Shown in pieces: positions 1 to 23,051 of a stretch of 59,795 nucleotides of DNA. Every line of letters begins with the position of its first letter. The first letter of the stretch is position 1. The position numbers and the translations under genes were made by a program. The DNA comes from Anaeramoeba ignava BMAN. Taxonomy: Eukaryota > Protista > Anaeramoebae. The notes beneath the pieces were generated by a model. It ran no database searches. It worked only from the letters and a program-made list of their open reading frames with translations, and was not told where the DNA came from. The DNA lies in the NCBI GenBank assembly GCA_028826165.1, contig JAPDFW010000036.1, positions 1 through 59,795 on the forward strand, given 5' to 3'.

Positions 1-2351
1 GAATATGCTTTTAATTCTTGATAAAATAATTACAAATTCAAATAAATCCATTAATTAACCAATTACAATTTAATGAAGTAATATTTCCTAATTTAGCTCT
101 TTGTTGAAATAATTGAACTTGGTTCTCCTCTAAATATGATATTTTCACAATTTAAATCAATACATCCTCGAATTGAAATATTATATTCAATATTTCCTGA
201 TATTTCACTTATTATTCCAATAACCATTTCCATTTAAATTAAGAGATGTGAATTTTTGCCAATTTGTTCCATTATCAAGTGAAATTGAATAATTATTTTG
301 CATTTGTTAATTTTTGTAAAATTAAATTCAATTTCTTCCAATTTTGAAATTGTTTCATAAATTGTTGGAGATGTTAAATTATCAGTTTTAATTGAAATTG
401 AAGAAATATATCCACATTTTCCATTTGAATTACATGCTGATATATTGATTTGATATTTTGATTTTGAAATTGAGCTATAAATTGTTGATTTGATGAAGTT
501 GGTTGATAATTTCCTGAATCATTTTGATAAATTGATTGGATAAGTTAAATTATAATAAAATGGAATTGAACAATTAATTGGTTGATTCCAATTACAATTA
601 ATATCTATTAAATTTGAAATTGAACATGTTAAATTTGTAACTTCTCCAAATAATAATGAAATTGATGATTCAACAATTTCTCCTTTATCATCTCCTTCAC
701 ATTCACCATGTGTTCTACATCCACAAATTGAAATATTATAATAATTTTCACATTCAAAATTATTCAAAAGATAATCAAGTGAAGAATTATCAACTGAAAT
801 GAAAAGATATTAAATCAGGTTTGAGATTGGATTGAAATAAGAAAGATTATAATGATCAATATGAGCAAGCCCTTCATTGATTTGAACATTTGATAATTCC
901 CAAGTAACATTAATTGAATAATTTGAAGGATTTGATAATTGGAAAATTTTTTACAGAATCAATTTTTGATGTTAAATTAATGAAAGAAGAAGATTCACCA
1001 CATTTCATTGATGTTTCATTATCACAAGCTTTTGATTTGAATTGAATAATATTCATTTCCAGTAATACATATCATAAATTGAAGAATTGTTGATAACAAA
1101 TATTTTCATTTTCAAGAATTGGAGAATCAATATCAATCCAATCATATCCATACTAATTTGATATTTCAAAGTTGAAGGAAATTCAATTTTATCCCAATAA
1201 CAATCAAATGATGAAAACAAAGATGAACAATTAACAATATTAACTTGTGGAATTAAACTAACTTCATAAACAAATGCTTCATTTGCATCATAAGCTCCAA
1301 CAACAGTAACATTCCCATAAATTGAAACAGATTGTCCGAATATAGAAGATGATTCATTCAAAATTTTTCTTCATTCCAAAAATGTTCCATTATATCTGTA
1401 AATAAATGCTTGACTTTCAATAAGAGCACCAATAACAATAACATTCTCATAAATTGAAACAGAATATCCAAAATACGTAATAGGTTGACTCAAAATTTGT
1501 TCTTGATTCCAAATTGATCCATTATATCTGTAAATAAATGCTTGAGTTGCATCATCTCCAATAGCAATAACATCTTGGTAAATTGAAACAGAAGATCCAA
1601 AACCTGAAGGTTCACTCAAATTTTGTTCTTCATTCCAAAATGCTCCATTATATCTGTAAATAAATACTTGATTTGCACCATAAGTTCCAATAACAGTAAC
1701 ATTCTCATAAATTGAAACACTTATTCCAAAATATGAAGCTGATTCATTCAAAATTTGTTCTTGATTCCAAAATGTTCCATTATATCTGTAAATAAATGCT
1801 TTATTTGCACCATTAGTTCCAATAACAGTAACATTCTCATAAATTGAAACAGATTCTCCAAAATTTGTAACTGATTCACTCAAAGTTTGTTCTTGATTCC
1901 AAATTGATCCATTATATCTGTAAATATATGCTTGATTTGCACCAGGAGCTCCAATAACAATAACATCTTCATAAACTGAAACACTTCTTCCAAAATTTGT
2001 AACTGATTCATTCAAAGTTTGTTCTTGATTAAAATTTGTTCCATTATATCTGTAAATAAATACTTGATTTGAAGCCCAAGTTCCAATAACAAGAACATCT
2101 TTATAAATTGAAACAGAATATCCAAAATATCCTGAACTTGAAAATTGATCTAATAAATTCCAAATCCAAGCTTCATTGAAAGAAGAATAATATCTTGTTG
2201 TTTCTGTTAATGTTTTTATTTCTGTTAATATTGGTGATACTGATATTAATGATGATTGAATTGATTTTTGATTTTGATTTTGATTTGATTGAATTAAGAA
2301 AATATTGATAATTAAGAAAAAGAAAAAGGAAAAGAAAAGATTTAATTTCAT
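1..2351 (-). CDS. Receptor-like protein, array copy D: signal peptide, 7 FG-GAP blades, FN3 domains; frameshifted and running off the window start
   Basis: ORFs 1371-2351, 1053-1361 and 519-767 are collinear pieces near-identical to the intact 6622-9381 paralog; breaks lie at or near homopolymers (sequencing error or pseudogene). Confidence 0.85.
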
Positions 2352-2995
2352 TTTGTTTTGTTTTGTTGTTTTTTGCTTTTTTTTTAAATAAATATAAATA
2401 AAAATAAATAAATATAAGTAAAATTAATAAATAAATTGTGTGTTTTTGTGTTTTTGTTTATGTTATTTTTATGTTGTTTTTCTTACTTTTTTTTGGTTTT
2501 TAAAAAGAAAAATAAAAATAAAAATAAAAATGATCTTTTTGTTTTTATTAATTTTTTAATTTAAATTTAAAAATTTTTTGGTTTGTTTCTTTTTAATCTT
2601 TTTTCTTTTTTTTTTTTTTTAATTTAATCCCCTTTTTTAATATAAAATAAATATAAAATAAAAATAATAAAATAATTTCTAAATTTTAAATTAATTTAAA
2701 AACTTATTTTATTTTATTTTTCATAAATAAATTCTTTTTAATTTTTAAAAATAAAAATTAAATATATTATTATTTTAAATTTTATCAAATATTTCTTGTT
2801 TTGAATTTAATTATTAATTTCTTCATTTTTCTTTTTTAAATTAATTTAATCAAAATCAAAATCAAAATCAAAAAATAATAAATTTGTTTTTTGTTTTTTT
2901 TTTTTTTGAAATTTTGGAAAATAGATTGTTTTGAATTTTTTGAAAAGAAAAAAGAAAAAAGAAAAAAGAATTGAAATTGGGAATTGGAATTGGAA

Positions 2996-5833
2996 TTAAA
3001 TATCTAAATCATCTTGAAGTTCTTTTTCTTCTTGTTTTTGATTTAGATTTTTGGTTTGTTTTTGTTTTTTTGTTTTTGTTTTTTTCTGATATAAAAGAAT
3101 TGCAATAATAACTATTAAAATAATAATAATAGGAATAAGCATTCCAATAGTTATTGCTGTTGTGTTGGAATTGTTTGAATCAGTTGATTGAGTTGGTTGA
3201 TAAGGAGATAATATTGTAATTGATGTTGTTGAATTAATTCCTGAATATTCATTATTTAAACAATTTAAATCAGCTGATGAATAAACTGAAATTTCATAAT
3301 ATTCTCCTCCTTCTAATCCTGAAGTAATTGAATAGTAGTTGATTAAATTTGTTAAACAAATTGATATTGAATTAAATTTAAATGAATATGATTTTAATCC
3401 ACTTGATAAAATTAATGGATCCCAACTACAAATAAATCCATTAATTAATGAATAACAATTTAATGAAGTAATATTTCCTAATTTAGCTCTTGTTGAAATA
3501 ATTGAACTTGGTTCTCCTAAATATGATATTTCACAATTTAAATCAGCACATCCTCGAATTGAAATATTATATTCAATATTTCCTGATATTTCACTTATTA
3601 TTCCAATAACTTCATTTCCATTTAAATCAAGAGATGTGAATTTTTGCCAATTTGTTCCATTATCAAGTGAAATTGAATAATTATTTGCATTTGTTAATTT
3701 TGTGAAATTAAATTCAATTTCTTCAATTTTGGAAATTGTTTCATAAATTGTTGGAGATGTTAAATTATCAGTTTTAATTGAAATTGAAGAAATATATCCA
3801 CATTTTCCATTTGAATTACATGCTGATATATTGATTTGATATTCTTGATTTGGAAATTGAACTGTAAATTGTTGATTTAATGAAGTTGGTTGATAATTTC
3901 CTGAATCATTTTGATAAATTGATTGATAAGTTAAATTATAATAAAATGGAATTGAACAATTAATTGGTTGATTCCAATTACAATTAATATCGATTGAATT
4001 TGAAATTGAACATGTTAAATTTGTAACTTCTCCAAATAATAATGAAATTGATGATTCAACAATTTCTCCTTTATCATCTCCTTCACATTCTTGTGTTCTA
4101 CATCCACAAATTGAAATATTATAATCATTTTCACATTCAAAATTATTCAAAAGATAATCAAGTGAAGAATTATCAACTGAAATGAAAGATATTAAATCAG
4201 GTTGAGATTGATTGAGATAAGAAAGATTATAATGATCAAGATGAGCAATTCCTTCATCGATTTGAACATTTGGATAATTCCATGTAACATTAATTGAATT
4301 ATTTGAAGGATTTGATAATTGGAAATCTTTTACAGAATCAATTTTTGATGTTAAATTAATGAAAGAAGAAGATTCACCACATTTCATTGTTGTTGGATTA
4401 CAAGCATGAATTTGAATTGAATAATATTCATTTCCAGTAATATTATCATAAATTGAAGAATTAAATTGTTGATAATAAATATTCTCATCTTCAAGAATTG
4501 GAGAATCAATATCAATCCAATCATATCCATAATTGATTTGATATTTCAAATTTGGAATTTGAATTTCATCCCAATAACAATCAAACGATGAAAACAAAGA
4601 TGAACAATTAATAATATTAACTTGAGGAATTAATTTAAATTTATAAACAAATGCTCGATTTGCACCATCAGTTCCAATAACAGTATAATTCTCATAAATT
4701 GAAACAGAATATCCAAAATATGAAGCTGATTCATTCAAATTTTGTTCTTGATTCCAAAATGTTCCATTATATCTGTAAATAAATGCTTCATTTATACTAT
4801 TAGTTCCAATAACAGTAACATTCTCATAAATTGAAACAGAATATCCAAACCATAAAGGTTCACTCAAAATTTGTTCTTCATTCTAAATTGATCCATTATA
4901 TCTGTAAATAAATGTTTGATTTGCACCAGGAGCTCCAATAACAGTAAAATTCCCATAAATTGAAACAGATCGTCCAAAACCTAAATATAAAGGTCCATTC
5001 AAATTTTGTTCTTTATTCCAAAATGTTCCATTATATCTGTAAATAAATGCTTGACTTTCAATAAGAGCACCAATAACAATAACATTCTCATAAACTGAAA
5101 CACTTATTCCAAAAATTTGAAGGTTGACTCAAAATTCATTCAAAAAATTTGTTCTTGATTCCAAAATGTTCCATTATATCTGTAAATAAATGCTTTATCT
5201 GCACCATAAGTTGTAAATAACACTTGATTTGCATTCTCATAAATTGAAAGAAAGATTCTCCAAAATTTGAAGCTGATTCATACAAATTTTGTTCTTGATT
5301 CCAAAAATGTTCCATTATATCTGTAAATAAATACTTGATTTGCACCATTAGCTCCAATAACAATAACATCTTCATAAACTGAAACAGAATATCCAAAAAT
5401 ATGAAGTTGATTCATTCAAAGTTTGTTCTTGATTCCAAAATTGTTCCATTATATCTGTAAATAAATGCTTGTTTTGCACCATGAGCTCCAACAACAATAA
5501 CATCTTCATAAACTGAAACACTTCATCCAAAATTTTAACTCGAGAACATTTTTATAAGTTCAAAAACAGAATATCCAAAATCTCCTAATGAACCTGAAAA
5601 TTGATCAAAAATCCTGAACCTGAAAATTGATCTAATAAATTCCAAATCCAAGCTTCATTGAAAGAAGAATAATATCTTGTTGTTTCTGTTAATGTTTTTA
5701 TTTCTGTTAATATTGGTGATATTGATATTAATGATGATTGAATTGATTTTTGATTTTTATTTTGATTTGATTGAATTAAGAAAATATTGATAATTAAGAA
5801 AAAGAAAAAGGAAAAGAAAAGATTTAATTTCAT
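2996..5833 (-). pseudogene. Receptor-like protein, array copy C: 7 full blades plus 1 partial FG-GAP blade, FN3s, TM; 5' half disrupted
   Basis: Same N-terminus (MKLNLFFSFFFF at 5833) and intact C-terminal 623-aa ORF with TM; several indels at 5100-5620 and TGG->TAG at 4883-4885. Could be an intact gene with assembly errors. Confidence 0.7.
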
Positions 5834-6219
5834 TTTTTTGTTTTGTTGTTTTTGCTTTTTAAATAAAAATAAATAAAAATAAATTAATATAAGTAAAATT
5901 AATAAATAAATTGTGTGTTTTTGTTTTTTGTGTTTATGTTTGTTTTTCTTACTTTTTTGTTTTTTTGAATTTTTTTGTTGTTTTTTTTTTTGCTTTTTTT
6001 TTTTAAATAAAAATAAAAATAAAAATAAAAATAAAAATAAAAAATAAATTGTGTGTTTTTGTGTTTTTGTGTTATTTTTATGTTTTTTTTTTTCTTACTT
6101 TTTTTTGGTTTTTTAAAAGGAAAAGAAAAAAGAAAAAATGATCTTTTGTTTTTTTTAATTTTAATTTTAAAAAAATTTTTTTTGTTTTAATTTTAATTTT
6201 AATTTTAAAAAAAATTTTT

Positions 6220-6408
6220 GGAATATTTATCTGTTTTATCTTTTTATTGGTTTCTTTTTCAATAATTTCTCTTTTAAATTGTTTTTCTTTTTCTTTTTAA
6301 TTTTGATTTAAATTAAATTTATTAATAAATCAAATAAAATTTTTGGATTTTTGTTTTGATTTAATTGAAAATAATTAATTTCTATTTGAATTTAATTAAT
6401 TATTTCTT
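6220..6408 (-). pseudogene. Decayed fragment of the 3' end of the RCC1-BTB gene
   Basis: Aligns by eye with 12148-12329 (e.g. atttatctgttttatcttttt, tttctttttcaataatttctcttttaaattgtttttctttttct, gatttaattgaaaataat). Confidence 0.85.
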
Positions 6409-6621
6409 CATTTTTCTTTTTTAAAATAATTTAATCAAAATCAAAATCAAAATCAAAAAATAATAAATTTGTTTTTTGTTTTTTGTTTTTTTTTGAAATT
6501 TTGGAAAATAGATTATTTTGAATTTTTTGAAAAGAAAAAAGAAAAGAAAAAAAAGAATTTGGAAAATTGGAATTGGGAATTGGAATTAGAATTAGAATTG
6601 GAATTAGAATTGGAATTAGAA

Positions 6622-9381
6622 TTAAAGATCTAAATTATCTTGAAGTTCTTTTTCTTCTTGTTTTTGATTTAGATTTTTGATTTGTTTTTGTTTTTTTGTT
6701 CTTGTTTTTTTCTGATATAAAAGAATTGCAATAACAACTATTAAAATAATAAGAATTGGAATAAATATTCCAATAGTTATTGCTGTTGTGTTGGAATTGT
6801 TTGAATCAGTTGATTGAGTTGGTTGATAAGGAGATAATATTGTAATTGATGTTGTTGAATTAATTCCTGAATATTCATTATTTAAACAATTTAATGTAGA
6901 TGATTGTTGAACTGAAATTTCATAATATTCTCCTTCTTGTAATCCTGAAATTGAATAGTAATTGATTAAATTTGTTAAACAAATTGATATTGAATTGTAA
7001 GTAAATGAATATGCTTTTAATCCACTTGATAAAATTAATGAATTCCAACTACAAACAAATCCATTAATTAATGAATAACAATTTAATGAAGTAATATTTC
7101 CTAATTTAGCTCTTGTTGAAATAATTGAACTTGGTTCTCCTAAATATGATATTTCACAATTTAAATCAATACATCCTCGAATTGAAATATTATATTCAAT
7201 ATTTCCTGATATTTCACTTATTATTCCAATAACTTCATTTCCACTTAAATCAAGAGATGTGAATTTTTGCCAATTTGTTCCATTATCAAGTGAAATTGAA
7301 TAATTATTTGCATTTGTTAATTTTGTGAAATTAAATTCAATTTCTTCAATTTTGGAAATTGTTTCATAAATTATTGGAGATGTTAAATTATCAGTTTTAA
7401 TTGAAATTGATGAAATATATCCACATTTTCCATTTGAATTACATGCTGATATATTGATTTGATATTCTTGATTTTGAAATTGAACTGTAAATTGTTGATT
7501 TGATGAAGTTGGTTGATAATTTCCTGAATCATTTTGATAAATTGATTGATAAGTTAAATTATAATAAAATGGAATTGAACACTTAATAATTGGTTGATTC
7601 CAATTACAATTAATATCTATTAAATTTGAAATTGAACATGTTAAATTTGTAACTTCTCCAAATAATAATGAAATTGATGATTCAACAATTTCTCCTTTAT
7701 CATCTCCTTCACATTCTTGTGTTCTACATCCACAAATTGAAATATTATAATCATTTTCACATTCAAAATTATTCAAAAAATAATCAAGTGAAGAATTATC
7801 AACTGAAATGAAAGATATTAAATCAGGTTGAGATTGATTGAGATAAGAAAGATTATAATGATTAAGATGAGCAATTCCTTCATTGATTTGAACATTTGGA
7901 TAATTCCATGTAACATTAATTGAATTATTTGAAGGATTTGATAATTGGAAATCTTTTACAGAATCAATTTTTGATGTTAAATTAATGAAAGAAGAAGATT
8001 CACCACATTTCATTGATGTTTCATTATCACAAGCTTTGATTTGAATTGAATAATATTCATTTCCAGTAATATTATCATAAATTGAAGAATTAAATTGTTG
8101 ATAATAAACATTTTCATTTTCAAGAATTGGAGAATCAATATCAATCCAATCATATCCATAATTAATTTGATATTTCAAAGTTGAAGGAAATTCAATTTCA
8201 TTCCAATAACAATCAAACGATGAAAACAAAGATGAACAATTAATAATATTAACTTGAGGAATTAAACTAACTTCATAAACAAATGCTTCATTTGCATCAT
8301 AAGCTCCAATAACAGTAACATTCCCATAAATTGAAACAGATTGTCCGAATTGTGAAGATGATTCACTCAAAATTTTTTCTTCATTCCAAAATGTTCCATT
8401 ATATCTGTAAATAAATGTTTGATTTATCCAATAAGCTCCAATAACAATAACATTTCCATAGACTGAAACAGAATATCCAAAACCTGAAGCTGAAGGTTCA
8501 TTCAAATTTTGTTCTTGATTCCAAAATGTTCCATTATATCTGTAAATATATGCTTGATTTGCACCATTAGTTCCAATAATAAGAACATCTTCATAAATTG
8601 AAACACTTCTTCCAAAACCTGAAACTGAAGGTTCATTCAAAATTTGTTCTTCATCCCAAATTGCTCCATTATATCTATAAATAAATGTTTGATTTGCATT
8701 AGGAGTTCCAATAACAGTAACATTCTCATAAATTGAAACACTCCATCCAAAACCTGAAACTGAAGGTTCATTCAAATTTTGTTCTTGATTCCAAATTGCT
8801 CCATTATATCTATAAATAAATGCTTGATTTGCATTAGGAGCTCCAATAACAGTAACATTCTCATAAATTGAAACAGAATATCCAAAAAATGAAGCTGATT
8901 CATTCAAAATTTGTTCTTGATTCCAAATTGATCCATTATATCTGTAAATAAATGCTTGTTTTGCAATAAGAGCTCCAATAACAATAACATCTTCATAAAT
9001 TGAAACAGAATATCCAAAAAATGAAGCTGATTCATTCAAAGTTTGTTCTTGATTCCAAAATGTTCCATTATATCTGTAAATAAATGCTTGTTTTGCACTA
9101 TAAGCTCCAATAACAAGAACATCTTTATAAATTGAAACACTCCATCCAAAATAATCTCCTGATGAACCTGAAAATTGATCTAATAAATTCCAAATCCAAG
9201 CTTCATTGAAAGAAGAATAATATCTTGTTGTTTCTGTTAATGTTTTTATTTCTTTTAATATTGGTGATATTGATATTAATGATGATTGAATTGATTTTTG
9301 ATTTTGATTTTGGTTTGATTGAATTAAGAAAATATTGATAATTAAGAAAAAGAAAAAGGAAAAGAAAAGATTTAATTTCAT
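6622..9381 (-). CDS. Receptor-like type-I membrane protein, array copy B (919 aa): signal peptide, 7 FG-GAP-like repeats, ~5 FN3-like domains, TM, basic tail
   Basis: Intronless ORF; hydrophobic N-terminus; seven ~44-aa repeats FGxSVSIYxxVxVIGA..AFIYRYNGxxW; FN3 signatures (W...Y...YxISIxAC); TM AITIGIFIPILIILIVVIAILLY; many NxS/T sequons. Confidence 0.9.
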   Translation of the reverse strand: MKLNLFFSFFFFLIINIFLIQSNQNQNQKSIQSSLISISPILKEIKTLTETTRYYSSFNEAWIWNLLDQFSGSSGDYFGWSVSIYKDVLVIGAYSAKQAFIYRYNGTFWNQEQTLNESASFFGYSVSIYEDVIVIGALIAKQAFIYRYNGSIWNQEQILNESASFFGYSVSIYENVTVIGAPNANQAFIYRYNGAIWNQEQNLNEPSVSGFGWSVSIYENVTVIGTPNANQTFIYRYNGAIWDEEQILNEPSVSGFGRSVSIYEDVLIIGTNGANQAYIYRYNGTFWNQEQNLNEPSASGFGYSVSVYGNVIVIGAYWINQTFIYRYNGTFWNEEKILSESSSQFGQSVSIYGNVTVIGAYDANEAFVYEVSLIPQVNIINCSSLFSSFDCYWNEIEFPSTLKYQINYGYDWIDIDSPILENENVYYQQFNSSIYDNITGNEYYSIQIKACDNETSMKCGESSSFINLTSKIDSVKDFQLSNPSNNSINVTWNYPNVQINEGIAHLNHYNLSYLNQSQPDLISFISVDNSSLDYFLNNFECENDYNISICGCRTQECEGDDKGEIVESSISLLFGEVTNLTCSISNLIDINCNWNQPIIKCSIPFYYNLTYQSIYQNDSGNYQPTSSNQQFTVQFQNQEYQINISACNSNGKCGYISSISIKTDNLTSPIIYETISKIEEIEFNFTKLTNANNYSISLDNGTNWQKFTSLDLSGNEVIGIISEISGNIEYNISIRGCIDLNCEISYLGEPSSIISTRAKLGNITSLNCYSLINGFVCSWNSLILSSGLKAYSFTYNSISICLTNLINYYSISGLQEGEYYEISVQQSSTLNCLNNEYSGINSTTSITILSPYQPTQSTDSNNSNTTAITIGIFIPILIILIVVIAILLYQKKTRTKKQKQIKNLNQKQEEKELQDNLDL

Positions 9382-9997
9382 TTTTTGTTTTGTTTTGTTG
9401 TTTTTTGCTTTTTTTTTTTAAATAAAAATAAAAATAAAAAATAAATTGTGTGTTTGTGTGTTTTTTATGTTATTTTTATGTTGTTTTTCTTACTTTTTGT
9501 TTTTAAAAGAAAAATAAAAATAAAAATAAAAATGATCTTTTTGTTTTTATTATTTAATTTTTAATTTAAATTTAAAAAAAATTTTTGTTTCTTTTTAATC
9601 TTTTTTCTTTTTAATTTTAAAAAATCCCCTTTTTAATATAAAATAAAATAAAAAATAAAAATAAAAATAATTTTTAAATTTTAAATGGTTTTAAAAATTT
9701 TATTTTATTTTATTTTTCATAAATAAATTCTTTTTAATTTTTAAAAATAAAATTAAATTTATTAATTATTTTAAATTTTATCAAATATTTCTTGTTTTGA
9801 ATTTAATTATTAATTTCTTCATTTTTCTTTTTTAAATTAATTTAATCAAAATCAAAATCAAAATCAAAAAATAATAAATTTGTTTTTTGTTTTTTGTTTT
9901 TTTGAAATTTTGGAAAATAGATTGTTTTGAATTTTTTGAAAAGAAAAAAGAAAAAAGAAAAAGAATTTGGAATTGGAATTGGGAATTGAAATTGGAA

Positions 9998-12085
9998 TTA
10001 AAGATCTAAATTATCTTGAAGTTCTTTTTCTTCTTGTTTTTGATTTAGATTTTTGGTTTGTTTTTGTTTTTTTGTTCTTGTTTTTTTCTGATATAAAAGA
10101 ATTGCAATAATAACTATTAAAATAATAAGAATTGGAATAAATATTCCAATAGTTATTGCTGTTGTGTTGGAATTGTTTGAATCAGTTGATTGAGTTGGTT
10201 GATAAGGAGATAATATTGTAATTGATGTTGTTGAATTAATTCCTGAATATTCATTATTTAAACAATTTAATGTAGATGATTGTTGAACTGAAATTTCATA
10301 ATATTCTCCTCCTTGTAATCCTGAAATTGAATAGTAATTGATTAAATTTGTTAAACAAATTGAAGTTGAATTGTAAGTAAATGAATATGCTTTTAATCCA
10401 CCTGATAAAATTAATGAATTCCAACTACAAACAAATCCATTAATTAATGAATAACAATTTAATGAAGTAATATTTCCTAATTTAGCTCTTGTTGAAATAA
10501 TTGAACTTGGTTCTCCTAAATATGGTGTTTCACAATTTAAATCAATACATCCTCGAATTGAAATATTATATTCAATATTTCCTGATATTTCACTTATTAT
10601 TCCAATTATTTCATTTCCACTTAAATCAAGAGATGTGAATTTTTGCCAATTTGTTCCATTATCAAGTGAAATTGAATAATTATTTGCATTTGTTAATTTT
10701 GTGAAATTAAATTCAATTTCTTCAATTTTGGAAATTGTTTCATAAATTGTTGGAGATGTTAAATTATCAGTTTTAATTGAAATTGATGAAATATATCCAC
10801 ATTTTCCATTTGAATTACATGCTGATATATTGATTTGATATTCTTGATTTTGAAATTGAACTGTAAATTGTTGATTTGATGAAGTTGGTTGATAATTTCC
10901 TGAATCATTTTGATAAATTGATTGATAAGTTAAATTATAATAAAATGGAATTGAACACTTAATAATTGGTTGATTCCAATTACAATTAATATCTATTAAA
11001 TTTGAAATTGAACATGTTAAATTTGTAACTTCTCCAAATAATAATGAAATTGATGATTCAACAATTTCTCCTTTATCATCTCCTTCACATTCATGTGTTC
11101 TACATCCAAAAATTGAAATATTATAATCATTTTCAGATTCAAAATTATTCAAAAAATAATCAAGTGAAGAATTATCAACTGAAATGAAAGATATTAAATC
11201 AGGTTGAGATTGAATGAAATAAGAAAGATTATAATGATCAAGATGAGCAATTCCTTCATTGATTTGAACATTTGGATAATTCCATGTAACATTAATTGAA
11301 TTATTTGAAGGATTTGATAATTGGAAATATTTTACAGAATCAATTTTTGTTGATAAATTAATGAAAGAAGAAGATTCACCACATTTCATTGATGTTTCAT
11401 TATCACAAGCTTTGATTTGAATTGAATAATATTCATTTCCAGTAATATTATCATAAATTGAAGAATTAAATTGTTGATAATAAACATTCTCATCTTCAAG
11501 AATTGGATAATCAATATCAATCCAATCAAAACCATAATTGATTTGATATTTCAAATTTGGAATTTGAATTTCATCCCAATAACAATCAAATGATGAAAAT
11601 GAAGATGAGCAATTAATAATATTAACTTGAGGAATCTGTATAAATTGATAAACAAATGCTTGATTTGCACCATCAGTTCCAATAACAGTAAAATTCTCAT
11701 AAATTGAAACAGAATATCCAAAATATGAAGCTGATTCATTCAAATTTTGTTCTTGATTCCAAATTAATCCATTATATCTGTAAATAAATGCTTGATTTGC
11801 ACTATAAGCTCCAATAACAGTAACATTCTCATAAATTGAAACACTCCATCCAAAATAATCTCCTGATGAACCTGAAAATTGATCTAATAAATTCCAAATC
11901 CAAACTTCATTGAAAGAAGAATAATATCTTGTTGTTTCTGTTAATGTTTTTATTTCTTTTAATATTGGTAATATTGATATTAATGATGATTGAATTGATT
12001 TTTGATTTTGATTTTGGTTTGATTGAATTAAGAAAATATTGATAATTAAGAAAAAGAAAAAGGAAAAGAAAAGATTTAATTTCAT
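9998..12085 (-). CDS. Receptor-like protein, array copy A (695 aa) with only 2 FG-GAP repeats
   Basis: Intact ORF near-identical to copy B except for five missing blades. Confidence 0.9.
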   Translation of the reverse strand: MKLNLFFSFFFFLIINIFLIQSNQNQNQKSIQSSLISILPILKEIKTLTETTRYYSSFNEVWIWNLLDQFSGSSGDYFGWSVSIYENVTVIGAYSANQAFIYRYNGLIWNQEQNLNESASYFGYSVSIYENFTVIGTDGANQAFVYQFIQIPQVNIINCSSSFSSFDCYWDEIQIPNLKYQINYGFDWIDIDYPILEDENVYYQQFNSSIYDNITGNEYYSIQIKACDNETSMKCGESSSFINLSTKIDSVKYFQLSNPSNNSINVTWNYPNVQINEGIAHLDHYNLSYFIQSQPDLISFISVDNSSLDYFLNNFESENDYNISIFGCRTHECEGDDKGEIVESSISLLFGEVTNLTCSISNLIDINCNWNQPIIKCSIPFYYNLTYQSIYQNDSGNYQPTSSNQQFTVQFQNQEYQINISACNSNGKCGYISSISIKTDNLTSPTIYETISKIEEIEFNFTKLTNANNYSISLDNGTNWQKFTSLDLSGNEIIGIISEISGNIEYNISIRGCIDLNCETPYLGEPSSIISTRAKLGNITSLNCYSLINGFVCSWNSLILSGGLKAYSFTYNSTSICLTNLINYYSISGLQGGEYYEISVQQSSTLNCLNNEYSGINSTTSITILSPYQPTQSTDSNNSNTTAITIGIFIPILIILIVIIAILLYQKKTRTKKQKQTKNLNQKQEEKELQDNLDL

Positions 12086-12138: not shown

Positions 12139-13974
12139 TTAAAATATGGAACATTTATCTGTTTTATCTTTTTCTTGTTTCTTTTTCAATAATTTCTCTT
12201 TAAATTGTTTTTCTTTTTCTATTTGATTTTGATTATTAAATTTATTAATTAATAAATCAAATAAATTTGGATTTGTTTGATTTAATTGAAAATAATCAAT
12301 TCCAATTTGAATTTCATTAATTATTTCTTGTGTAATTTGAATTCCATTTTTAATTTGATTTGAATAAATCCAATATTCTAATATTTGAAATGATTTATTA
12401 CTTAATTCACTATAATCTGTAACTTTATTAGATTTATCTTCAGTTACAGATAAAAACATTCCTCGATATAATTCACTTCTCATTATTAATATTAATTTAG
12501 GAAATTTATATTTCTTTTCTTTTCTTTCAATAATAAAATCTTTTTCATCTTCATTTAAATAAATTCTTTTCATTGTTTCTTCAATTTTTTCATTTGAATT
12601 TATAATTTCTTTAATTTCAGAATATAATTTCGGATTTATTTTGGAATTATTTGAATAAATCATTTCAAATATTTGATTTGATTCTTTAATTGATTTTTTT
12701 GAAATAATTTCTTGAAGTTTTTCAATTTGATTTTGATTTTGATTTAATCTATATTTCAATATTAATTTATGAGCTTTGATTATTTCTCCATTTTCGGTTT
12801 TAAATGAAATATCACAAAATTCTTTTCTTCTAAATAGTTTTATTAAATCTTCTTCAAGATTGGAAAAAGGAGGAGGAGAATAATAAAGAAATGTTTTATC
12901 ATTCCCACAAGAAATACGATAACTGGAAATATTTTCATTAAATCTTAATTTAGGAAGTTCAATTTGAATTGGAATTATTTGATTTTCTGTATCTCCAGTT
13001 CCTAATTGACCATAAGAATTATCTCCAAATCCAATCAATTTTGAATTAGATGTTAAAATCAAAGTATGATTAATTCCAACAGAAAAATCAAGAATATTAT
13101 CATCATTTTCAAATAAAGATGATTTAATTTCAGTAAATTCATTTGTGTAGGCTATCTTTAAAATCCCATTTCGAGTATAATATCCACATGAATAAAGTTT
13201 TCTTTTTGGATTTTCATTTTCATTTTCAATCAACATTATTGAATGAAATTCTCCACTTTGAATATCAATTATTTTACCTTTTGGAATATTTTGAATTTTG
13301 GTTAATTTTCGGATTCTTGTTTCTCTTATTGATTCTCCTAATCCAAGTTGATAATATTGGTTATCACCGCAAACAAATAGTTCTTGATTTGAATTTAAAA
13401 GAAAAACATGATCTGAATCAATTCCTGAAAATATTTTAGAAACATTTTTCATCATTAAAATTGGTTTTTCTGTTTTTGGAAGTGTTTCAGAATCAAAACC
13501 AAGTTGGCAATATCCATTTGAACCAATTCCATAAGCATTTTGATTTGAAGTTAATAAGTAAATTGATTTAGCTCCAGAAACAACATCTTGAATTATTCTA
13601 TCATTTGTATCTTCAATTAATGATGAAATATTGATAAATTCATTTGGATTATTTGGATTAATATTTTTTCCTTTGGCAAATACATTTCCTTCTATTGTTA
13701 AAATAGCTTCATTTTCATAACCAACAGTTACTTTTTGAATATTTTCTTCAATTTGTATTTTTTTATTTGAATCATTTAAATATTCTATTGCTTTTCCATT
13801 TTCAAAAAGGAGAATTGTTGAAAAATAACTTGTTGAAATTTGTTTAATTTGTTTTTCATTTTCATTTTCATTTTCATTTTCAAATTTAAATTGAATTGGT
13901 TTTATTATTATATATGGTTCATTTTCGATAAGAATTGGTTTTTCATTTTGACCAAAAAATATAATTTCATTCAT
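12139..13974 (-). CDS. RCC1-repeat plus tandem BTB/POZ protein with C-terminal CaaX (CSIF)
   Basis: RCC1 motifs (GSNGYCQLG, GDNQYYQLG, GINHTLIL..GDNSYGQLG); BTB motifs FCDISF..IKAHKLIL and KDFII..LILIMRSELYRGMF; ends KDKTDKCSIF*. Confidence 0.88.
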   Translation of the reverse strand: MNEIIFFGQNEKPILIENEPYIIIKPIQFKFENENENENEKQIKQISTSYFSTILLFENGKAIEYLNDSNKKIQIEENIQKVTVGYENEAILTIEGNVFAKGKNINPNNPNEFINISSLIEDTNDRIIQDVVSGAKSIYLLTSNQNAYGIGSNGYCQLGFDSETLPKTEKPILMMKNVSKIFSGIDSDHVFLLNSNQELFVCGDNQYYQLGLGESIRETRIRKLTKIQNIPKGKIIDIQSGEFHSIMLIENENENPKRKLYSCGYYTRNGILKIAYTNEFTEIKSSLFENDDNILDFSVGINHTLILTSNSKLIGFGDNSYGQLGTGDTENQIIPIQIELPKLRFNENISSYRISCGNDKTFLYYSPPPFSNLEEDLIKLFRRKEFCDISFKTENGEIIKAHKLILKYRLNQNQNQIEKLQEIISKKSIKESNQIFEMIYSNNSKINPKLYSEIKEIINSNEKIEETMKRIYLNEDEKDFIIERKEKKYKFPKLILIMRSELYRGMFLSVTEDKSNKVTDYSELSNKSFQILEYWIYSNQIKNGIQITQEIINEIQIGIDYFQLNQTNPNLFDLLINKFNNQNQIEKEKQFKEKLLKKKQEKDKTDKCSIF

Positions 13975-14044: not shown

Positions 14045-17000
14045 TTAATAATCTTTTTCATCATCAAAACCAAAATCAATATTCCAATCAGAAACAGTAT
14101 TTGATTCTTTTGGTAAATTTTGATTATCTGATTGTAATTGTTGGAAAAGAAAATTTGAATCATTTTGGATTGATTTTTGAGAAGAATCATTTGGATCATT
14201 TTTTTGATTAAAAGAATCCATTAATAAATCATCAAAAAGATTTTTTTCGTCATTATTTTGCCAATCATTTGTTTCATTCATAAAAGAATTTTTCAAGTCA
14301 GTTTCTTTTTCAATTCCATTCATAATATCTTCTTCAAAAGTCCAATCATCCCAACCTTGAGGAAGTATTTCTTTCTTATTTTGCTTGCTTCTTGAAGTTA
14401 AATCAAGTCCTTTTTTGGGTGTTTTTTCAAAACTTATTAATAATCCTGATTCTGTATTTGTTTTTTCCTTTTCTTGTTGATTTGGTAGTATATTTTGACT
14501 TTTTTCTGATTTTTTTGGTTGATTTTGCATTTTTGAAGTGAGTGTTAAAGGTGAAGTATTTGATTTTTTGGGTTGGATTTGAGATAATTTATGTTGATTT
14601 TGAATTTTTGGAATTTCTTTTTTTGGTTTTTGGATTTTTTGATTCAACATTTTTTGATTTTCATTTTTCAAGTTATTTTGATTATGAATTTTTTGATTTT
14701 TCAAGATATTTTCATTTTTTTGATTTTGAATTTTTTGATTTTGAATTTTTGGATTTTGATTTTGATTTTTTGAATTTTCATTTTGATTTTTTGAATTTTC
14801 ATTTTGATTTAAATTTGGATTTGGTGAATTCTTTGTTTCTTCTCCTCTTCTTAATTTCTGTTGAACCCAACCCATTAAAGAAGATTTATTTTCAGAATTC
14901 TCAGGTTGAGAAAGTTCCTTTTCATGAATTTTGACACTTTCTTGTTCAAGCATTTCAACAAAAGCTTTTACAACAACAGCTCCCATTTTACGAACTTCAA
15001 AATCTGGATCAGCCAAAACAACACAAACTGAAGGTAAAAGTTTTCTTGCAGAAGAAGAGAAGGAATAAGAGTCTTTTGTGGCAAGTAAAGCTTTCAAAGA
15101 ATTAATTCTTGAGGGAGAAAAAGGGTCTTTTAAAGAGCGCAAAAAAACGGGTATCAAAATTTGCTCTTTTGTTGATTGTTTGAGATATTGAGCAATTTTT
15201 CCTAAGCAAATTATAGAGTTTGTACGGATTCCTGGTTCGGGATCCATTTGCAATTTTGAGATCAATCTAACGGCTTTGTTGTCTAAATTTTGCTCATTCA
15301 AACTTGGCGCAAAATGAACCATACATTTGAGCGTTAGTTCTCTTAAAAGAGGAGCAGAATCAGTGAATCCGTTGATGATGTTATTAAAAATCACTCCGTT
15401 GATATCTTGCTTTGAAAGAAACTTAATATAATCAGGAAGGTTTTCCAAAAGACCGATTCGAATGCTTCGGTTCATTGAAGAAAATAATTTCAAAATCACT
15501 GGGGCAATCATTGTTGTGTATTCTTCTTGGGTTAATAAAGACGTTATAATAAGAACTGGTCGCAAAACTTTGACATTGTTTGTCAGTTTGAGTTGTTCAA
15601 GAAGAATCGGCAATAGTTTCTGTTTCGAAACTTTTTCTGGTATTTTGGATATTAAAGTCGGGATTTTCTTGAAAAATGATTCGCGTTCATGTTCGCTTTT
15701 CAAGGCAATTGATTCGAGAAAATTGAGGGAAATGAAGTAGGAATTGTTCTGGAAAAAATCGCTTTTGATTGCGGTTTCTGGAGATATTCTATCGGTTGGG
15801 TTGCTTGCAGTTAATCCTGATATAATCTTAATAAGCTCATCTATGTTTTCTATTTGGCTTCCTTTAAACAATTTTTTGATTTGATGAGCTGAATAAAAAA
15901 TGTTATTATTTTTGCCTCCAAATTGAACTGTTGATAAAATTTCAGTCAAAAAACATCCAAGACAATAAGAATCAATTGCATGAATTGGTGACTGTTTTAT
16001 TTGGTTAATTGCTCTGCTTTCAATTTCTGGAGGTTGATATTTTAATCTATTTAGTTTGTTTGCTAAATCTTGTTGTGATAATTCATCAAATTTAATTGAG
16101 TGATCAAGTGTCCCTAATTTCCAATCTCCTCCTTCTGTTACAAAAATATTTGATGAATCTAGCGATCCGTGAATTATTTTACATGAAGAATTAAGAAATT
16201 CTAGTGCAGTCTTTATAGATTTTAATATTAATATTAATTTTATAAATGAATTTTGATTTATAAATGAATTTTAATTTTAATTTTGATTTTAATTTTAATT
16301 TTAATTTTGATTTATAAATGAATTTTAATTTTATAAATGAATTTTGATTTTAAATGAATTTTGATTTATAAATGAATTTTAATTTTAATTTTATAAATGA
16401 ATTTTGATTTATAAATGAATTTTGATTTATAAATGAATTTTGATTTATAAATGAATTTTAATTTTAATTTTAATTTTAATTTTAATTTTAATTTTATAAA
16501 TGAATTTTATAAATGAATTTTGATTTTAATTTTAATTTTATAAATGAATTTTAATTTTAATTTTAATTTTATAAATGAATTTTAATTTTAATTTATAAAT
16601 GAATTTTAATTTTAATTTATAAATGAATTTTATAAATGAATTTTATAAATGAATTTTGATTTATAAATGAATTTTAATTTTAATTTTAATTTATAAATGA
16701 ATTTTAATTTTATAAATGAATTTTAATTTATAAATGAATTTTAATTTTATAAATGAATTTTATAAATGAATTTTAATTTTATATTTAATTTTATATTTAA
16801 TTTTATAATTTTATTTATAATTTTATTTATAATTTTATTTATAATTTTATAAATGAATTTTGATTTATAAATGAATTTTATAAATGTACTGCTAATTTAT
16901 AAATTCCCCATATTTTTTCATCAAAAGTTAAATTATTTAAAACTTGATTAAGAGGAATTGCAGGTTCTGTTATATAATATATCATTTGTTCATTTTCATC

Positions 17001-17333
17001 ACCTTCTAAATATTGAAGGAAATCAGGATGATGAGTTATTCTAATATTATGATATCCATTTGTCGCTAAATAAATTGCAGTTCTTTGTGTTGTTTGTTCA
17101 ATTTTTCTTAAAAAAATTGATACTTTTGAATTATCACTCTTTTTAAAAATTTCAATTTAATTTTTTCAATTTAATTTTTTCATTTTAATTTTTTCATTTT
17201 AATTTTTTAATTTAATTTTTAATTTTTAATTTTTTTTTACTTTTCTTTTTCCTTCATGAAGAACCCAATTTTCAAGTTGATATTGAGTTTCTCCAATTTC
17301 AAAAGGTAAACTGCTTGTAAATGTGTTTCCCAT
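14045..17333 (-). CDS. SCYL1: SCY1-like pseudokinase with HEAT repeats (SCYL1/Cex1 family), 3 exons
   Basis: Spliced model: MGNTFTSSLPF.. (ATG 17333), introns ~17139-17240 and 16211-16889 (GT-AG); kinase-like motifs IIHGSL..NIFVTEGGDWKLG; HEAT region GFTDSAPLLRELTLK, DPEPGIRTNSIICLGKIA. Confidence 0.92.
16211..16889. repeat. Intronic satellite (ATAAATGAATTTT / TTTTAA variants)
   Basis: Tandem repeat filling SCYL1 intron 2 between GT and AG. Confidence 0.9.
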
Positions 17334-17533
17334 TTAAATTTTTATTATTTAAAATTTCAAAAAAATAAGAAAAACAAAAAAACGTAAAATGAAAAATGAA
17401 ATTAAAAAAAAATGAAAAATAAAATTATTCTTATTTTTATCATTATTAGTCATTAAAAAAAATTTAAATAAAAAAAAATTAAATTAAAAAATTTTTTTTC
17501 ATTTTTTTCTTTTTTTCTTTTTTCTTTTTAATA
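17334..17533. promoter_or_regulatory. Putative bidirectional promoter SCYL1/RPL10A (200 bp)
   Basis: Head-to-head ATGs; TTTCATTTT motifs on each sense strand. Confidence 0.55.
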
Positions 17534-19459
17534 ATGTCGTACGTCATTTATATATCAATTTAAATTTTAATATTAATTTTAATTTTTAATTTTAATTTCT
17601 TTTACAAAATTGAAAATAAAGAAAATTAAATACAACTAATTTAGATCAAGCATTAAATCAAATTTACAATTATCTTTCAGAAAAAAAAAGAAAATTTACA
17701 GAAACATTTGAATTACAAATTACACTTAAAAATTATGATATTCAAAAAGATAAAAGATTTTCTGAATTTGTAAAACTTCCACATATAATAAAACCAAAAA
17801 TGAAAATATGTGTAATTGGAGATGAAACTCATTGTGAAGAAGCAAAAAATCTTTCAATACCTTTTGTTGATATTGGAACTATTAGCAGTTTTAGTGGAAA
17901 TGATAAACTTGCAAAACAATGGTGTATTTATTTTGGAAATTAAAATTCATTTTGAAAATTAAAATTAAAATTAAAATTAAAATTAAAATTAAAATGAAAA
18001 TTAAAATTGATATTAAAATTAAAATTAAAATTAAAATTCATTTATAAATTAAAATTAAAATTAAAATTCATTTTGAAAATTAAAATTAAAATTAAAATTA
18101 AAATTAATATTAAAATTAAAATTAAAATTAATATTAAAATTAATATTAAAATTAAAATTAAAATTAAAATTAAAATTAAAATTAAAATTAAAATTAAAAT
18201 TAAAATTAAAATTAATATTAAAATTAAAATTAAAATTAAAATTAAAATTAAAATTAAAATTAAAATTAAAATTAAAATTAAAATTAAATTAAAATTAAAA
18301 TTAAAAATTAAAATTAAAAATTAAAATTAAAATTAAAATTAAAATTAAAATTAAAATTAAAATTAAAATTAAAATTAAAATTAAAATTAAAATTCATTTA
18401 AATTAAAATTAAAATTAAAATTAAAATTAATATTAAAATTAAAATTAAAATTAAAATTAAAATTCATTTATAAATTAAAATTAAAATTAAAATTCATTTA
18501 AATTAAAATTAAAATTAAAATTAAAATTAAAATTAAAATTAAAATTAATATTAAAATTTAAAATTAAAAATTAAAATTAAAATTCATTTATAAATTAAAA
18601 TTCATTTATAAAATTAAAATTAAAATTACTATTAAAATTAAAATTAAAATTAAAATTAAAATTAAAATTAAAAAAATTAAAATTATTAAAATTAAAATTA
18701 AAATTAAAATTAAAATTAAAATTAAAATTAAAATTAAAATTAAAATTATTAAATTAAAATTAAAATTAAAATTAATATTAAAATTAATATTAAAATTAAA
18801 ATTAAAAATTAAAATTAAAATTAAAATTAAAATTAAAATTAAAATTAAAATTAAAATTAAAATTAAAATTAAAATTAAAATTAAAATTAAAATTAAAATT
18901 AAAATTAAAATTAAAATTAAAATTAAAATTAAAATTAAATTAATATTAAAATTAAAATTAAAATTAAAATTAAAATTAAAATTAAAATTAAAATTAAAAT
19001 TAAAATTAAAATTAAAATTAAAATTAAAATTAAAATTAAAATTAAAATTAAAATTAAAATTAAAATTAAAATTAAAATTAAAATTAAAATTAAAATTAAA
19101 ATTAAAATTATTAAGCAAAAAGATATGATGGTTTCTTAGCAAGTGATAAACTTCTTAAAAAAGTTACAAGAACTGTTGGTTCTCTTTTAAACAAATTAGG
19201 AAAATTCCCTAAAATTATAACACATGAAGATTCTTTAGAAGATAAAATTTTAGAAATGAAACAAACAATTCATTTCCAATTAAAAAAAGCATTAAATTTA
19301 AATACAGCAATTGGAACAACTGAATTATCAAAACAAGAATTAAAAGAAAATATTGTTTCAGCTTTAGATTTTTTGGTTTCTTTACTTAAAAAACGTTGGC
19401 AAAATATTGATAAAGTTTATTTAAAAAGTACAATGTCTCCAAGTTTTCAACTTTTTTAG
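17534..19459 (+). CDS. RPL10A: 60S ribosomal protein uL1 (RPL10A), divergent, 3 exons
   Basis: ATG 17534; introns 17539-17621 and 17924-19115; KKRKFTETFELQITLKNYDIQKDKRFS, YDGFLASD, FLVSLLKKRWQNIDKVYLKSTM. Confidence 0.93.
17924..19115. repeat. Intronic microsatellite (AAAATT)n, ~1.2 kb
   Basis: Directly visible; fills RPL10A intron 2. Confidence 0.95.
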
Positions 19460-19658
19460 AATTATCTTTTCTTTTGAAATAAACAAAAACCTTTTATTTT
19501 TTAGAATTAAATCTTTTTTTTTTCATTTTCAATAAATCTTTTTTTTTTTCAATTCCAAATTATTCAATCTTTTTTTTTTTCAATTTTTTATTCTAAATCA
19601 ATCTATAAATTTTATTTATAAAGAAACAAATTTATATTTTCTTTTTTGTTGTTTTCAT

Positions 19659-22600: not shown

Positions 22601-22748
22601 AATTATTTATAAAATTACCAGTAATAATAGAACCTTTTGGAATAAGTTTTCTTTCACCTTTTCCTTCTTTTTTAATTAATTTTTGAATTCCATTTGAAGT
22701 CATTTCAACATTTTTACCTAATTCACCTAAACTTAAAATTTCAAACAT
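19659..22748 (-). CDS. FKBP-type PPIase plus TPR co-chaperone with long poly-QN tail, 2 exons
   Basis: Intron 21275-22618; spliced ..KGSIITAHYEARLENGEIFDST..GKVIPGFEKGLMTM..AYGKFGSPPTIPGNST; TPR motifs KEEGNEY, NLALCHLK, KCLYRRAQA. Confidence 0.92.
21275..22618. repeat. Intronic 12-bp satellite (ATAAAATTATTT)n
   Basis: Directly visible; fills the FKBP intron. Confidence 0.95.
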
Positions 22749-23051
22749 TATTTATAAAATTTTCTTTTTAAATTAAAATGAAAAAAATGAAAAAAATGAA
22801 AAATGAAAAATGAAAAATGAAAAAATTTTTTTTGAATTTTTTTTCATTTTAAAAAATTGCAAAAAAAAAATGAAAAAAAAAAAAAGATTTAAAAGAAATT
22901 TCTTCTTAGAATTGTTTGTTGAGAACAAGAGAAATTTAAATCAAATTATTTAAAAAAAAAATAATGTATTTGAATTCAATAAAATTCGGAATTTTATAAA
23001 TTGATTTTTTTTTTGGATTTTAAAAATGATTTTTTTTTAAAAATGATTTCT

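What the first reader, a model, noticed from the sequence alone, without database searches (positions are those of the whole stretch)
1..12085. Tandem array of FG-GAP propeller/FN3 surface receptors with hypervariable blade loops: candidate diversifying recognition system
Seen: four head-to-tail, intronless paralogs with near-invariant signal peptide, FN3 stalk, TM and tail, whose ~132-bp blade repeats vary at three fixed spots. After IG: AYSAK, ALIAK, APNAN, TPNAN, TNGAN, AYWIN, AYDAN, TWASN, TYGAN, DDAT, ALIES, AHGAK, TNSIN, TDGAN. The residue after FG: W/Y/R/Q/E/I/S. The pre-FG linker: SASF, PSVSG, SVTN, PITY, PLW, PLYLG. The scaffold SVSIY..V.VIG..FIYRYNG..W..EQ.L is nearly constant. Known: seven FG-GAP repeats form the integrin-alpha-type beta-propeller, where the FG and GAP loops lie on the ligand-binding face. 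Inference: a constant scaffold with variable binding loops, conceptually like VLR/LRR receptors, used for prey, symbiont or self recognition in a protist. The propeller+FN3+TM architecture without a GFFKR tail is not a canonical integrin.
Basis: partly seen in the sequence, partly recalled or inferred. Interest (0 to 1): 0.85.

Follow-up and report, generated by a model that had tools for sequence, protein, structure and literature searches.

The report
Fast-evolving propeller surface receptor gene family
The anaerobic amoeba Anaeramoeba ignava carries about 80 genes for a membrane protein whose seven-bladed propeller head changes fast on one face while the rest stays nearly constant, which fits a repertoire of receptors for varied outside targets such as bacteria.

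Summary
The window is a whole Anaeramoeba ignava contig. Positions 1-12085 hold four tandem minus-strand copies of one gene: signal peptide, FG-GAP_2 propeller, FN3-like stalk, one membrane helix and a short tail. Only copy C (6622-9381, 919 aa) is intact with seven blades. Copy D (9998-12085) is an open frame with blades 1 and 7 only. Copy B is frameshifted in its propeller. Copy A is cut by the contig end and frameshifted only in its last 1.15 kb, which may be assembly error.

The genome holds at least 48 such loci, and about 80 annotated proteins share the stalk, all from A. ignava. The nearest outside relatives are bacterial propellers.

Across 26 full-length paralogs, variation sits in the 2-3 loop, the 4-1 linker and the residue after FG. 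By blade topology these lie on one face. Their dN/dS is about 2 (p about 1e-6, checked against neutral simulations). The stalk and tail give about 0.45. The variable sites are rich in Tyr and Trp. Blades 2-6 are shuffled between genes.

Expression and ligand are untested. The scan noted another member elsewhere in this genome.

The parts
9998..12085 (-). Copy D: open 695-aa frame with signal peptide, N-terminal strand, blades 1 and 7 only, full stalk, membrane helix and tail
   Evidence: its stalk, membrane helix and tail are 95% identical in protein to copy C's; only 53 bp separate its ATG from the upstream gene
9382..9997 (-). Spacer upstream of copy C, part of the duplicated unit
   Evidence: 92.5% identical to the spacer upstream of A (2352-2995)
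6622..9381 (-). Copy C: the only intact seven-blade gene in the window (919 aa)
9313..9381 (-). Copy C signal peptide (aa 1-23)
   Evidence: hydrophobic N-terminus, helix 2-22 in the model; dN/dS 0.65; assignment inferred, no signal-peptide predictor was run
8263..9201 (-). Copy C seven-blade FG-GAP_2 propeller (aa 61-373); the N-terminal strand 62-71 supplies the 28th strand and by inference closes blade 7
   Evidence: AlphaFold2 pLDDT 91, pTM 0.87, 28 strands; best Foldseek match integrin alpha-V 8w30_A, E 7e-15; TRF array 8276-9139
6817..8262 (-). Copy C stalk (aa 374-855): about five FN3-like beta-sandwich modules with conserved cysteines and 22 N-glycosylation sequons
   Evidence: Pfam fn3 E 3.5e-10 for one module; all-beta in the full-length model, pLDDT 50-80; dN/dS 0.46; cysteines and sequons
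6730..6816 (-). Copy C linker and membrane helix (aa 856-884)
   Evidence: hydrophobic stretch; model helix from residue 870
6625..6729 (-). Copy C cytoplasmic tail (aa 885-919), basic then acidic, ending in L-D-L or L-D-I across the family
   Evidence: dN/dS 0.42, p 0.001
2996..5833 (-). Copy B: broken propeller part (4868-5833) and an open 623-aa C-terminal frame (2996-4867)
   Evidence: the GenBank model P0037 (732 aa) starts out of frame and skips the breaks
1..2351 (-). Copy A: open 326-aa N-terminal frame with six blades (1371-2351); the rest is frameshifted and cut by the contig end
   Evidence: all frameshifts lie at 1-1152 next to the contig end, so assembly error is not excluded

Best explanation
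These are members of a large germline family of type I membrane proteins, known so far only from Anaeramoeba ignava: at least 48 loci and about 80 annotated proteins. Each intact member holds a seven-blade FG-GAP_2 propeller on a stalk of about five FN3-like modules, anchored by one membrane helix and a short conserved tail. New members arise by tandem duplication of 3.4-3.5-kb units made of gene plus spacer. Recombination within the 132-135-bp blade repeats shuffles the internal blades and now and then deletes some, as in copy D. The signal peptide, stalk, membrane helix and tail stay nearly identical, through purifying selection and probably gene conversion. Positive selection diversifies the loops of one propeller face: the 2-3 loop, the 4-1 linker and the residue after FG, which by inference rings the mouth of the central channel. 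Shown here: the architecture, the family size, where the variation sits, dN/dS above 1 and the mosaic structure. Inferred: that the variable face binds ligands, and that the ligands are varied outside surfaces. The likeliest ligands are bacteria that this bacterivorous, symbiont-bearing amoeba must capture or tell apart.
For: Architecture. Family size and restriction to A. ignava. Variation sits at three spots per blade, with a near-invariant stalk. Under MG94-F3x4 over 13 disjoint paralog pairs, the top loops give omega 2.01 (LRT 24.2, p 9e-7), bottom loops 0.48, stalk 0.46 and tail 0.42. Neutral simulations return about 1.0 for this estimator. The bootstrap 95% range is 1.5-3.4, the close pairs give 3.67, and the single-difference test gives N 338 against S 28 (omega 1.97, p 1e-4). 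Omega stays at 1.6-5.0 under all 12 mutation models tried. Per position, the residue after FG gives about 10 and the loop centre about 6. Inside the window, C against A gives top-loop dN 0.56, dS 0.05 and spacer divergence 0.075. The variable sites are 26% Tyr and 14% Trp against 7% and 2% overall. There are 147 distinct loop pentamers among 182, and every paralog has its own ring of residues. Blades 2-6 are not positionally conserved. Copy C is 97-99% identical to the C49 paralogs at both ends but only 86-94% in the propeller, where the nearest paralog keeps changing.
Against: No expression, localisation or binding data could be obtained. The absolute omega depends on the codon model: GY94-F61 gives 0.88 raw, although it returns about 0.5 under simulated neutrality. 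The strands also give omega near 1.2, so the whole propeller evolves fast. The pairs are not strictly independent, because the genes are mosaics. Face assignment rests on blade topology and predicted secondary structure, not on coordinates. Two to three of the four copies in this window cannot make a seven-blade head.
Confidence: 0.6

Rival explanations
1. The loops are merely unconstrained surface loops drifting neutrally. The apparent dN/dS above 1 is an estimator artefact of an 80% A+T genome, of multi-nucleotide changes or of misaligned blades.
For: GY94-F61 gives 0.88 for the top loops. NG86 inflates omega everywhere, giving the stalk 0.80. Strands also sit near 1.2. A quarter of top-loop codon pairs differ at 2-3 bases. 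The 4-1 linker has indels.
Against: Neutral simulations show MG94 is unbiased and GY-F61 is halved. Omega is at least 1.6 under every mutation model tried. The 2-3 loop has no indels and still gives 1.99, p 7e-4. Top-loop dN between C and A is about seven times the divergence of the adjoining spacer. The Tyr and Trp enrichment is not what drift in an A+T-rich genome would produce.
Confidence: 0.12
2. The family mediates recognition between amoebae, in mating, kin or self recognition, through head-to-head binding rather than recognition of bacteria.
For: Polymorphic tandem surface-receptor families under positive selection serve self-recognition in other amoebae (own knowledge: the Dictyostelium tgrB1/tgrC1 genes). 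The architecture is that of an adhesion molecule.
Against: About 80 paralogs in one genome suit a repertoire for many targets better than a matching-allele system. No partner or receptor-pair arrangement was seen in the window. No sexual or aggregative stage bearing on this was examined here.
Confidence: 0.12
3. The variable face is a site that a pathogen, virus or toxin exploits. The diversification is escape from that enemy, with extra copies acting as decoys, rather than tuning to useful ligands.
For: The same signature, positive selection on an exposed face with a conserved remainder, is typical of host receptors in arms races (own knowledge). Anaeramoeba species carry intracellular bacteria and many virus-derived genes.
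Against: No enemy is known for A. ignava. Escape usually acts on one or a few receptors, not on about 80 paralogs. The Tyr and Trp-rich composition looks built for binding.
Confidence: 0.1
4. The repertoire is diversified somatically, in the manner of VLRs, diversity-generating retroelements or programmed gene conversion from broken copies such as B.
For: Blades behave as interchangeable cassettes, and broken copies lie beside intact ones.
Against: Complete genes are present in the germline assembly. The substitution spectrum in the loops matches that elsewhere, with no adenine-specific pattern. No reads were available to look for somatic variants.
Confidence: 0.03

Closest known systems
Integrin alpha subunit head (FG-GAP seven-blade propeller)
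   Same: Seven four-stranded blades carrying FG and GAP-like motifs. Integrin alpha-V is the best structural match (8w30_A, E 7e-15, TM 0.68, 17% identity). The variable loops here are the 4-1 and 2-3 loops, the face integrins use for ligand and beta-subunit contact (own knowledge: Springer 1997, Xiong 2001). It is a type I membrane protein.
   Different: No sequence match to any solved structure. The 1-2 loops are two residues long and carry no DxDxDG calcium sites. There is no GFFKR motif and there are no thigh or calf domains; FN3-like modules take their place. It has about 80 paralogs. WD40 propellers match almost as well.
Bacterial FG-GAP_2 (PF14312) multi-propeller proteins
   Same: The same Pfam repeat family, and the nearest relatives outside A. 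ignava (for example a Phycisphaerales protein, 35% identity over the propeller).
   Different: The bacterial proteins carry 14-21 repeats and lack this FN3 stalk, membrane helix and tail. The stalk has relatives only in A. ignava. A bacterial origin of the head is an inference; no tree was built.
Expanded repeat-based surface families of protists (Trichomonas BspA-like LRR proteins, PMC2843621; Leishmania PSA, PMC2584048)
   Same: Large families restricted to one lineage, built from a repeat-based binding domain with a membrane anchor, and in PSA positive selection plus recombination. Titles and abstracts were seen; the papers were not read in full.
   Different: The binding scaffold is a closed beta-propeller, not an LRR solenoid. 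The organism is free-living with ectosymbionts, not a parasite facing adaptive immunity.
Lamprey variable lymphocyte receptors
   Same: Constant repeat scaffold, hypervariable ligand-facing residues and cassette-like repeat units (own knowledge).
   Different: VLRs are assembled somatically from an incomplete germline gene. Here complete genes are encoded in the germline and no assembly machinery was seen.
LINKIN / ITFG1 (PMC4275582)
   Same: A membrane protein with seven atypical FG-GAP repeats used in cell adhesion (abstract seen).
   Different: LINKIN is conserved across Metazoa rather than a large diversifying family. It did not appear among the listed sequence hits.

Membership tests
Pfam FG-GAP_2 (PF14312) repeat proteins | Score above the curated cut-off | tested here: met
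   129.5 bits against a cut-off of 23 for copy C; copies D, B and A also pass
Integrin alpha subunit | Seven-blade FG-GAP beta-propeller head | tested here: met
   AlphaFold2 gives 28 strands with pLDDT 91; integrin alpha-V is the best Foldseek match. This holds for copy C only.
Integrin alpha subunit | Calcium-binding DxDxDG hairpins in the 1-2 loops of the later blades | tested here: not met
   No such motif; the 1-2 loops are KD, ED, EN, EN, ED, GN and GN
Integrin alpha subunit | Thigh and calf leg domains and a membrane-proximal GFFKR motif | tested here: not met
   Only fn3 is found in the stalk; GFFKR is absent from the 67 A. ignava family proteins checked
Integrin alpha subunit | Heterodimer with a beta subunit | not tested
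   No search for an integrin beta in the genome was made
Fibronectin type III stalk | fn3 profile match and beta-sandwich modules | tested here: met
   fn3 at 35.8-43.6 bits against a cut-off of 25 for one or two modules. The other modules are all-beta in the model at pLDDT 50-80, so the count of five is approximate.
Diversifying surface-receptor multigene family | Many paralogs, conserved framework, and dN/dS above 1 confined to an exposed face | tested here: met
Diversifying surface-receptor multigene family | Expressed at the cell surface; restricted or exclusive expression | not testable with these tools
VLR-type somatically assembled receptors | Incomplete germline gene completed from flanking cassettes | tested here: not met
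   At least 40 complete open frames in the germline assembly
Diversity-generating retroelement targets | Adenine-specific substitutions in the variable region | tested here: not met
   The substitution spectrum of the loops resembles that of strands and stalk. A search for template repeats or a reverse transcriptase was not made.

The most novel reading that the evidence does not exclude
A. ignava uses this family as a propeller-based, germline-encoded variable receptor repertoire for choosing bacterial partners: sorting its sulfate-reducing symbiont into the symbiosome and prey into phagosomes. Blade shuffling would serve as a cassette-like generator of new specificities, and each cell would express only a subset of paralogs.
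Probability: 0.15. Interest if true: 0.85.

Novelty: new variant of a known kind. Interest (0 to 1): 0.62.

Why it matters
How Anaeramoeba recognises and keeps its symbionts is an open question. The genome paper only lists candidate interaction domains among laterally acquired genes. It counts three FG-GAP proteins in A. ignava and does not describe this family. A family of about 80 surface proteins, with positive selection focused on one Tyr- and Trp-rich propeller face, gives concrete and testable candidates for recognition of bacteria. It would also add a closed beta-propeller to the short list of scaffolds, such as Ig and LRR, that evolution has used for large variable-receptor repertoires.

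Tried and rejected
1. Reads. One run (X1, of unknown kind) held 24% of copy C's words. This leaves no check of expression or of the frameshifts.
2. Exact-protein look-ups for copies C and D found no records.
3. A metagenome scan with the stalk found no relatives.
4. A sequence search of solved structures with the propeller gave no hit at E 0.01 or better.
5. NG86 dN/dS was set aside as biased in this A+T-rich genome. GY94-F61 was set aside after neutral simulations returned about 0.5.
6. A DGR-like mutational signature was looked for and not found.
7. Closeness to contig ends was only mildly raised, 27 of 48 loci against 18.5 expected, and clustered loci are not independent. It was not pursued.
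8. The literature search found no paper on an FG-GAP family under diversifying selection.
9. No coordinates of the models were available, so faces were assigned from topology.
Full report
WHAT IS THERE

The window is an entire contig (G000:C38:1-59795) of a genome with about 20% G+C. Database hits identify the organism as Anaeramoeba ignava.

Positions 1-12085 carry four head-to-tail copies of one gene on the minus strand. I name them in the order of transcription.
- Copy D (9998-12085): an open frame of 695 aa.
- Copy C (6622-9381): an open frame of 919 aa.
- Copy B (2996-5833).
- Copy A (1-2351).

Pfam finds FG-GAP_2 (PF14312; 129.5 bits against a cut-off of 23 in C) and fn3. Tandem Repeats Finder finds blade arrays of period 132-135 bp with 78-86% matches. 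The spacers belong to the duplicated unit: those upstream of A and C are 92.5% identical. Unit length is 3.4-3.5 kb.

STATE OF THE FOUR COPIES

- Copy C is the only one complete with seven blades.
- Copy D keeps blade 1 and blade 7 and has lost blades 2-6 in frame, a loss of 224 aa. It cannot form a seven-blade propeller on its own.
- Copy B has a 26-nt duplication, five insertions of 1-2 nt and an in-frame stop between about 4880 and 5632. Its last 623 codons are open.
- The GenBank model for copy B (P0037, 732 aa, named 'myelin p0 related') begins in a wrong frame and skips the breaks, so it is a patched pseudogene model.
- Copy A has an open 326-aa start with six blades (1371-2351). About 18 frameshifting indels follow, all within 1-1152, and the contig end then cuts the gene.
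- Because those indels hug the contig end while the adjoining 1 kb is clean, assembly error is as likely as decay for copy A. I could not check reads.

The listed loop strings are all present, but some were read across frameshifts.

STRUCTURE

AlphaFold2 on residues 40-395 of copy C, using 26 family sequences, gives pLDDT 91 and pTM 0.87. The model has 28 strands, that is seven four-stranded blades. The N-terminal strand (residues 62-71) is the 28th strand. I infer that it completes blade 7.

The best Foldseek match is integrin alpha-V (8w30_A, E 7e-15, TM 0.68, 17% identity). WD40 propellers follow closely. No solved structure matches by sequence.

The full-length model (pLDDT 71) shows three further parts:
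- an all-beta stalk of about five modules at pLDDT 50-80;
- a membrane helix;
- a short tail.

The stalk holds 19 cysteines and 22 N-glycosylation sequons. The propeller has no DxDxDG calcium motif, and its 1-2 loops are only two residues long. There is no GFFKR motif. The protein is integrin-like in its head only.

THE FAMILY

A six-frame search of the genome gives 61 matches. At least 48 are separate loci, mostly at 65-87% identity, and many lie in tandem clusters. About five carry internal stops.

The protein database lists about 80 A. ignava proteins that share the stalk, and none from any other organism. The next hits for the propeller are bacterial and metagenomic FG-GAP_2 proteins at about 35% identity, with 14-21 repeats. 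A metagenome scan with the stalk found nothing.

The genome paper (PMC11550330) does not describe the family. Its Supplementary Data 5F lists only three laterally acquired FG-GAP proteins in A. ignava and none in A. flamelloides. Most members have a full set of blades, and a minority have two to five.

WHERE THE VARIATION SITS

In an alignment of 26 full-length paralogs, entropy is high at three places in every blade and close to zero along the stalk. The three places are:
- the five or six residues after IG;
- the residue after FG;
- the linker before FG.

The model's secondary structure assigns these to the 2-3 loop, the first residue of strand 1 and the 4-1 loop. In a four-stranded antiparallel blade, the 2-3 and 4-1 loops necessarily lie on the same face, opposite the 1-2 and 3-4 loops. 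In integrins that face contacts the ligand and the beta subunit (own knowledge). I had no coordinates, so this mapping rests on topology.

SELECTION

- NG86 gave inflated values everywhere, as expected when third positions are 93% A+T.
- I therefore fitted pairwise codon models jointly over 13 disjoint paralog pairs.
- MG94-F3x4 results are in the table below.
- GY94-F61 gave about half these values. Neutral simulations on the real codons returned 0.85-1.07 for MG94 and 0.39-0.55 for GY94-F61, so MG94 is the calibrated estimator.
- Bootstrapping codon columns gives a 95% range of 1.5-3.4. The eight closest pairs give 3.67.
- Codons differing at a single base give 338 non-synonymous against 28 synonymous changes, with a neutral expectation of 86% (omega 1.97, p 1e-4).
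- Omega stays at 1.6-5.0 for mutation models from 50% to 95% A+T and kappa from 1 to 5.
- Pooled by blade position, omega relative to the propeller-wide rate is about 10 at the residue after FG, about 6 at loop positions +16 and +17, and 3.5-5.8 at -3 to -1. It is 0.01-0.5 at the scaffold residues.
- Inside the window, C against A gives top-loop dN 0.56 and dS 0.05. The adjoining spacers differ by 7.5%.
- The substitution spectrum of the loops is ordinary.

| Partition | Codons | Omega (MG94-F3x4) | Test against omega = 1 |
|---|---|---|---|
| Top-face loops, all | 88 | 2.01 | LRT 24.2, p 9e-7 |
| 2-3 loop alone (no indels) | 42 | 1.99 | p 7e-4 |
| Strands | 160 | 1.19 | not significant |
| Bottom loops | 32 | 0.48 | p 0.002 |
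| Stalk | 484 | 0.46 | p 1e-17 |
| Tail | 35 | 0.42 | p 0.001 |

NATURE OF THE VARIABLE FACE

The hypervariable positions are 26% Tyr and 14% Trp, against 7% and 2% in the whole protein, with Gly, Asn, Asp and Ser also common. Among 182 blades there are 147 different 2-3 loop pentamers. Each of the 26 paralogs has its own ring of seven residues after FG. This is the composition typical of binding sites (own knowledge).

HOW DIVERSITY IS MADE AND CONTAINED

Blades 1 and 7 always find their nearest relative at the same position in another gene. Blades 2-6 find theirs at other positions or in the same gene about as often. This points to shuffling by recombination within the repeat array, and copy D is an extreme product of it.

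Copy C is 97-99% identical in DNA to the C49 paralogs in the signal peptide, stalk and tail. It is only 86-94% identical in the propeller, where the nearest paralog changes from window to window. The ends are thus kept uniform, probably by gene conversion together with purifying selection, while the head diverges.

MOST LIKELY FUNCTION

I take these proteins to be surface receptors or adhesins whose variable propeller face binds varied external ligands. Bacterial surfaces are the likeliest ligands, given that the organism feeds on bacteria and keeps sulfate-reducing symbionts in a symbiosome open to the outside (PMC11550330).

The conserved, selectively constrained tail suggests a shared downstream step such as uptake or sorting. 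All of this function is inference.

Rivals are neutral drift with estimator artefact, self-recognition between amoebae, escape from an enemy that uses the receptor, and somatic diversification. The structured fields give the evidence for and against each.

LIMITS

- No expression, localisation or binding evidence exists here.
- The pairs are not strictly independent, because the genes are mosaics.
- The bacterial origin of the head is inferred from hit lists, not from a tree.
- The scan had already noted another member of this family on a different piece of the same genome, and two further notes cover this same stretch.

VERDICT

It is a new variant of a known kind, namely lineage-specific diversifying surface-receptor families, built on a propeller scaffold and apparently not described before.

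Noticed in passing
window 2996-5375: The GenBank gene model for copy B (P0037, 732 aa, named 'myelin p0 related') starts with an out-of-frame translation of blade DNA and skips the frameshifts and the stop. It lacks a signal peptide and looks like a patched pseudogene model.
   Followed up: yes
window 12139-13974 (-): The gene directly upstream of copy D encodes an RCC1-repeat plus BTB protein (611 aa), and its stop lies only 53 bp from D's ATG. At another locus the annotated protein P0045 (1424 aa) combines FG-GAP_2, fn3, RCC1 and BTB domains. Either the same neighbour pair recurs elsewhere or two genes were fused in that model.
   Followed up: partly
window 1-1152: All of copy A's frameshifting indels (about 18, of 1, 2 or 5 nt) lie in the last 1.15 kb before the contig end, while the next 1 kb is clean. 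This pattern would fit poor consensus quality at a contig end.
   Followed up: partly
window 6625-6729 and family-wide C-termini: Most of the extracted open frames end in a conserved acidic tail of the form E-L-x-x-D-L-D-I/L, that is hydrophobic-x-hydrophobic at the very C-terminus. Several of the 43 end differently. The tail is under purifying selection (omega 0.42). No known sorting motif was matched.
   Followed up: no
window 8263-9201: The 1-2 loops often read E-N-V-T or G-N-V-T. That places N-glycosylation sequons on the face opposite the variable loops, and the propeller has 11 sequons in all.
   Followed up: no
window 16000-26000 and 30000-32000: Long stretches with only 8-15% G+C lie between genes or in introns, extreme even for this genome.
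   Followed up: no
genome-wide (G000 contigs C49, C75, C68, C77, C87, C116): Family members lie mostly in tandem clusters. 27 of 48 loci are within 40 kb of a contig end, against 18.5 expected. This may reflect assembly breaks at repeats or a chromosome-end location.
   Followed up: partly
   Followed up: no
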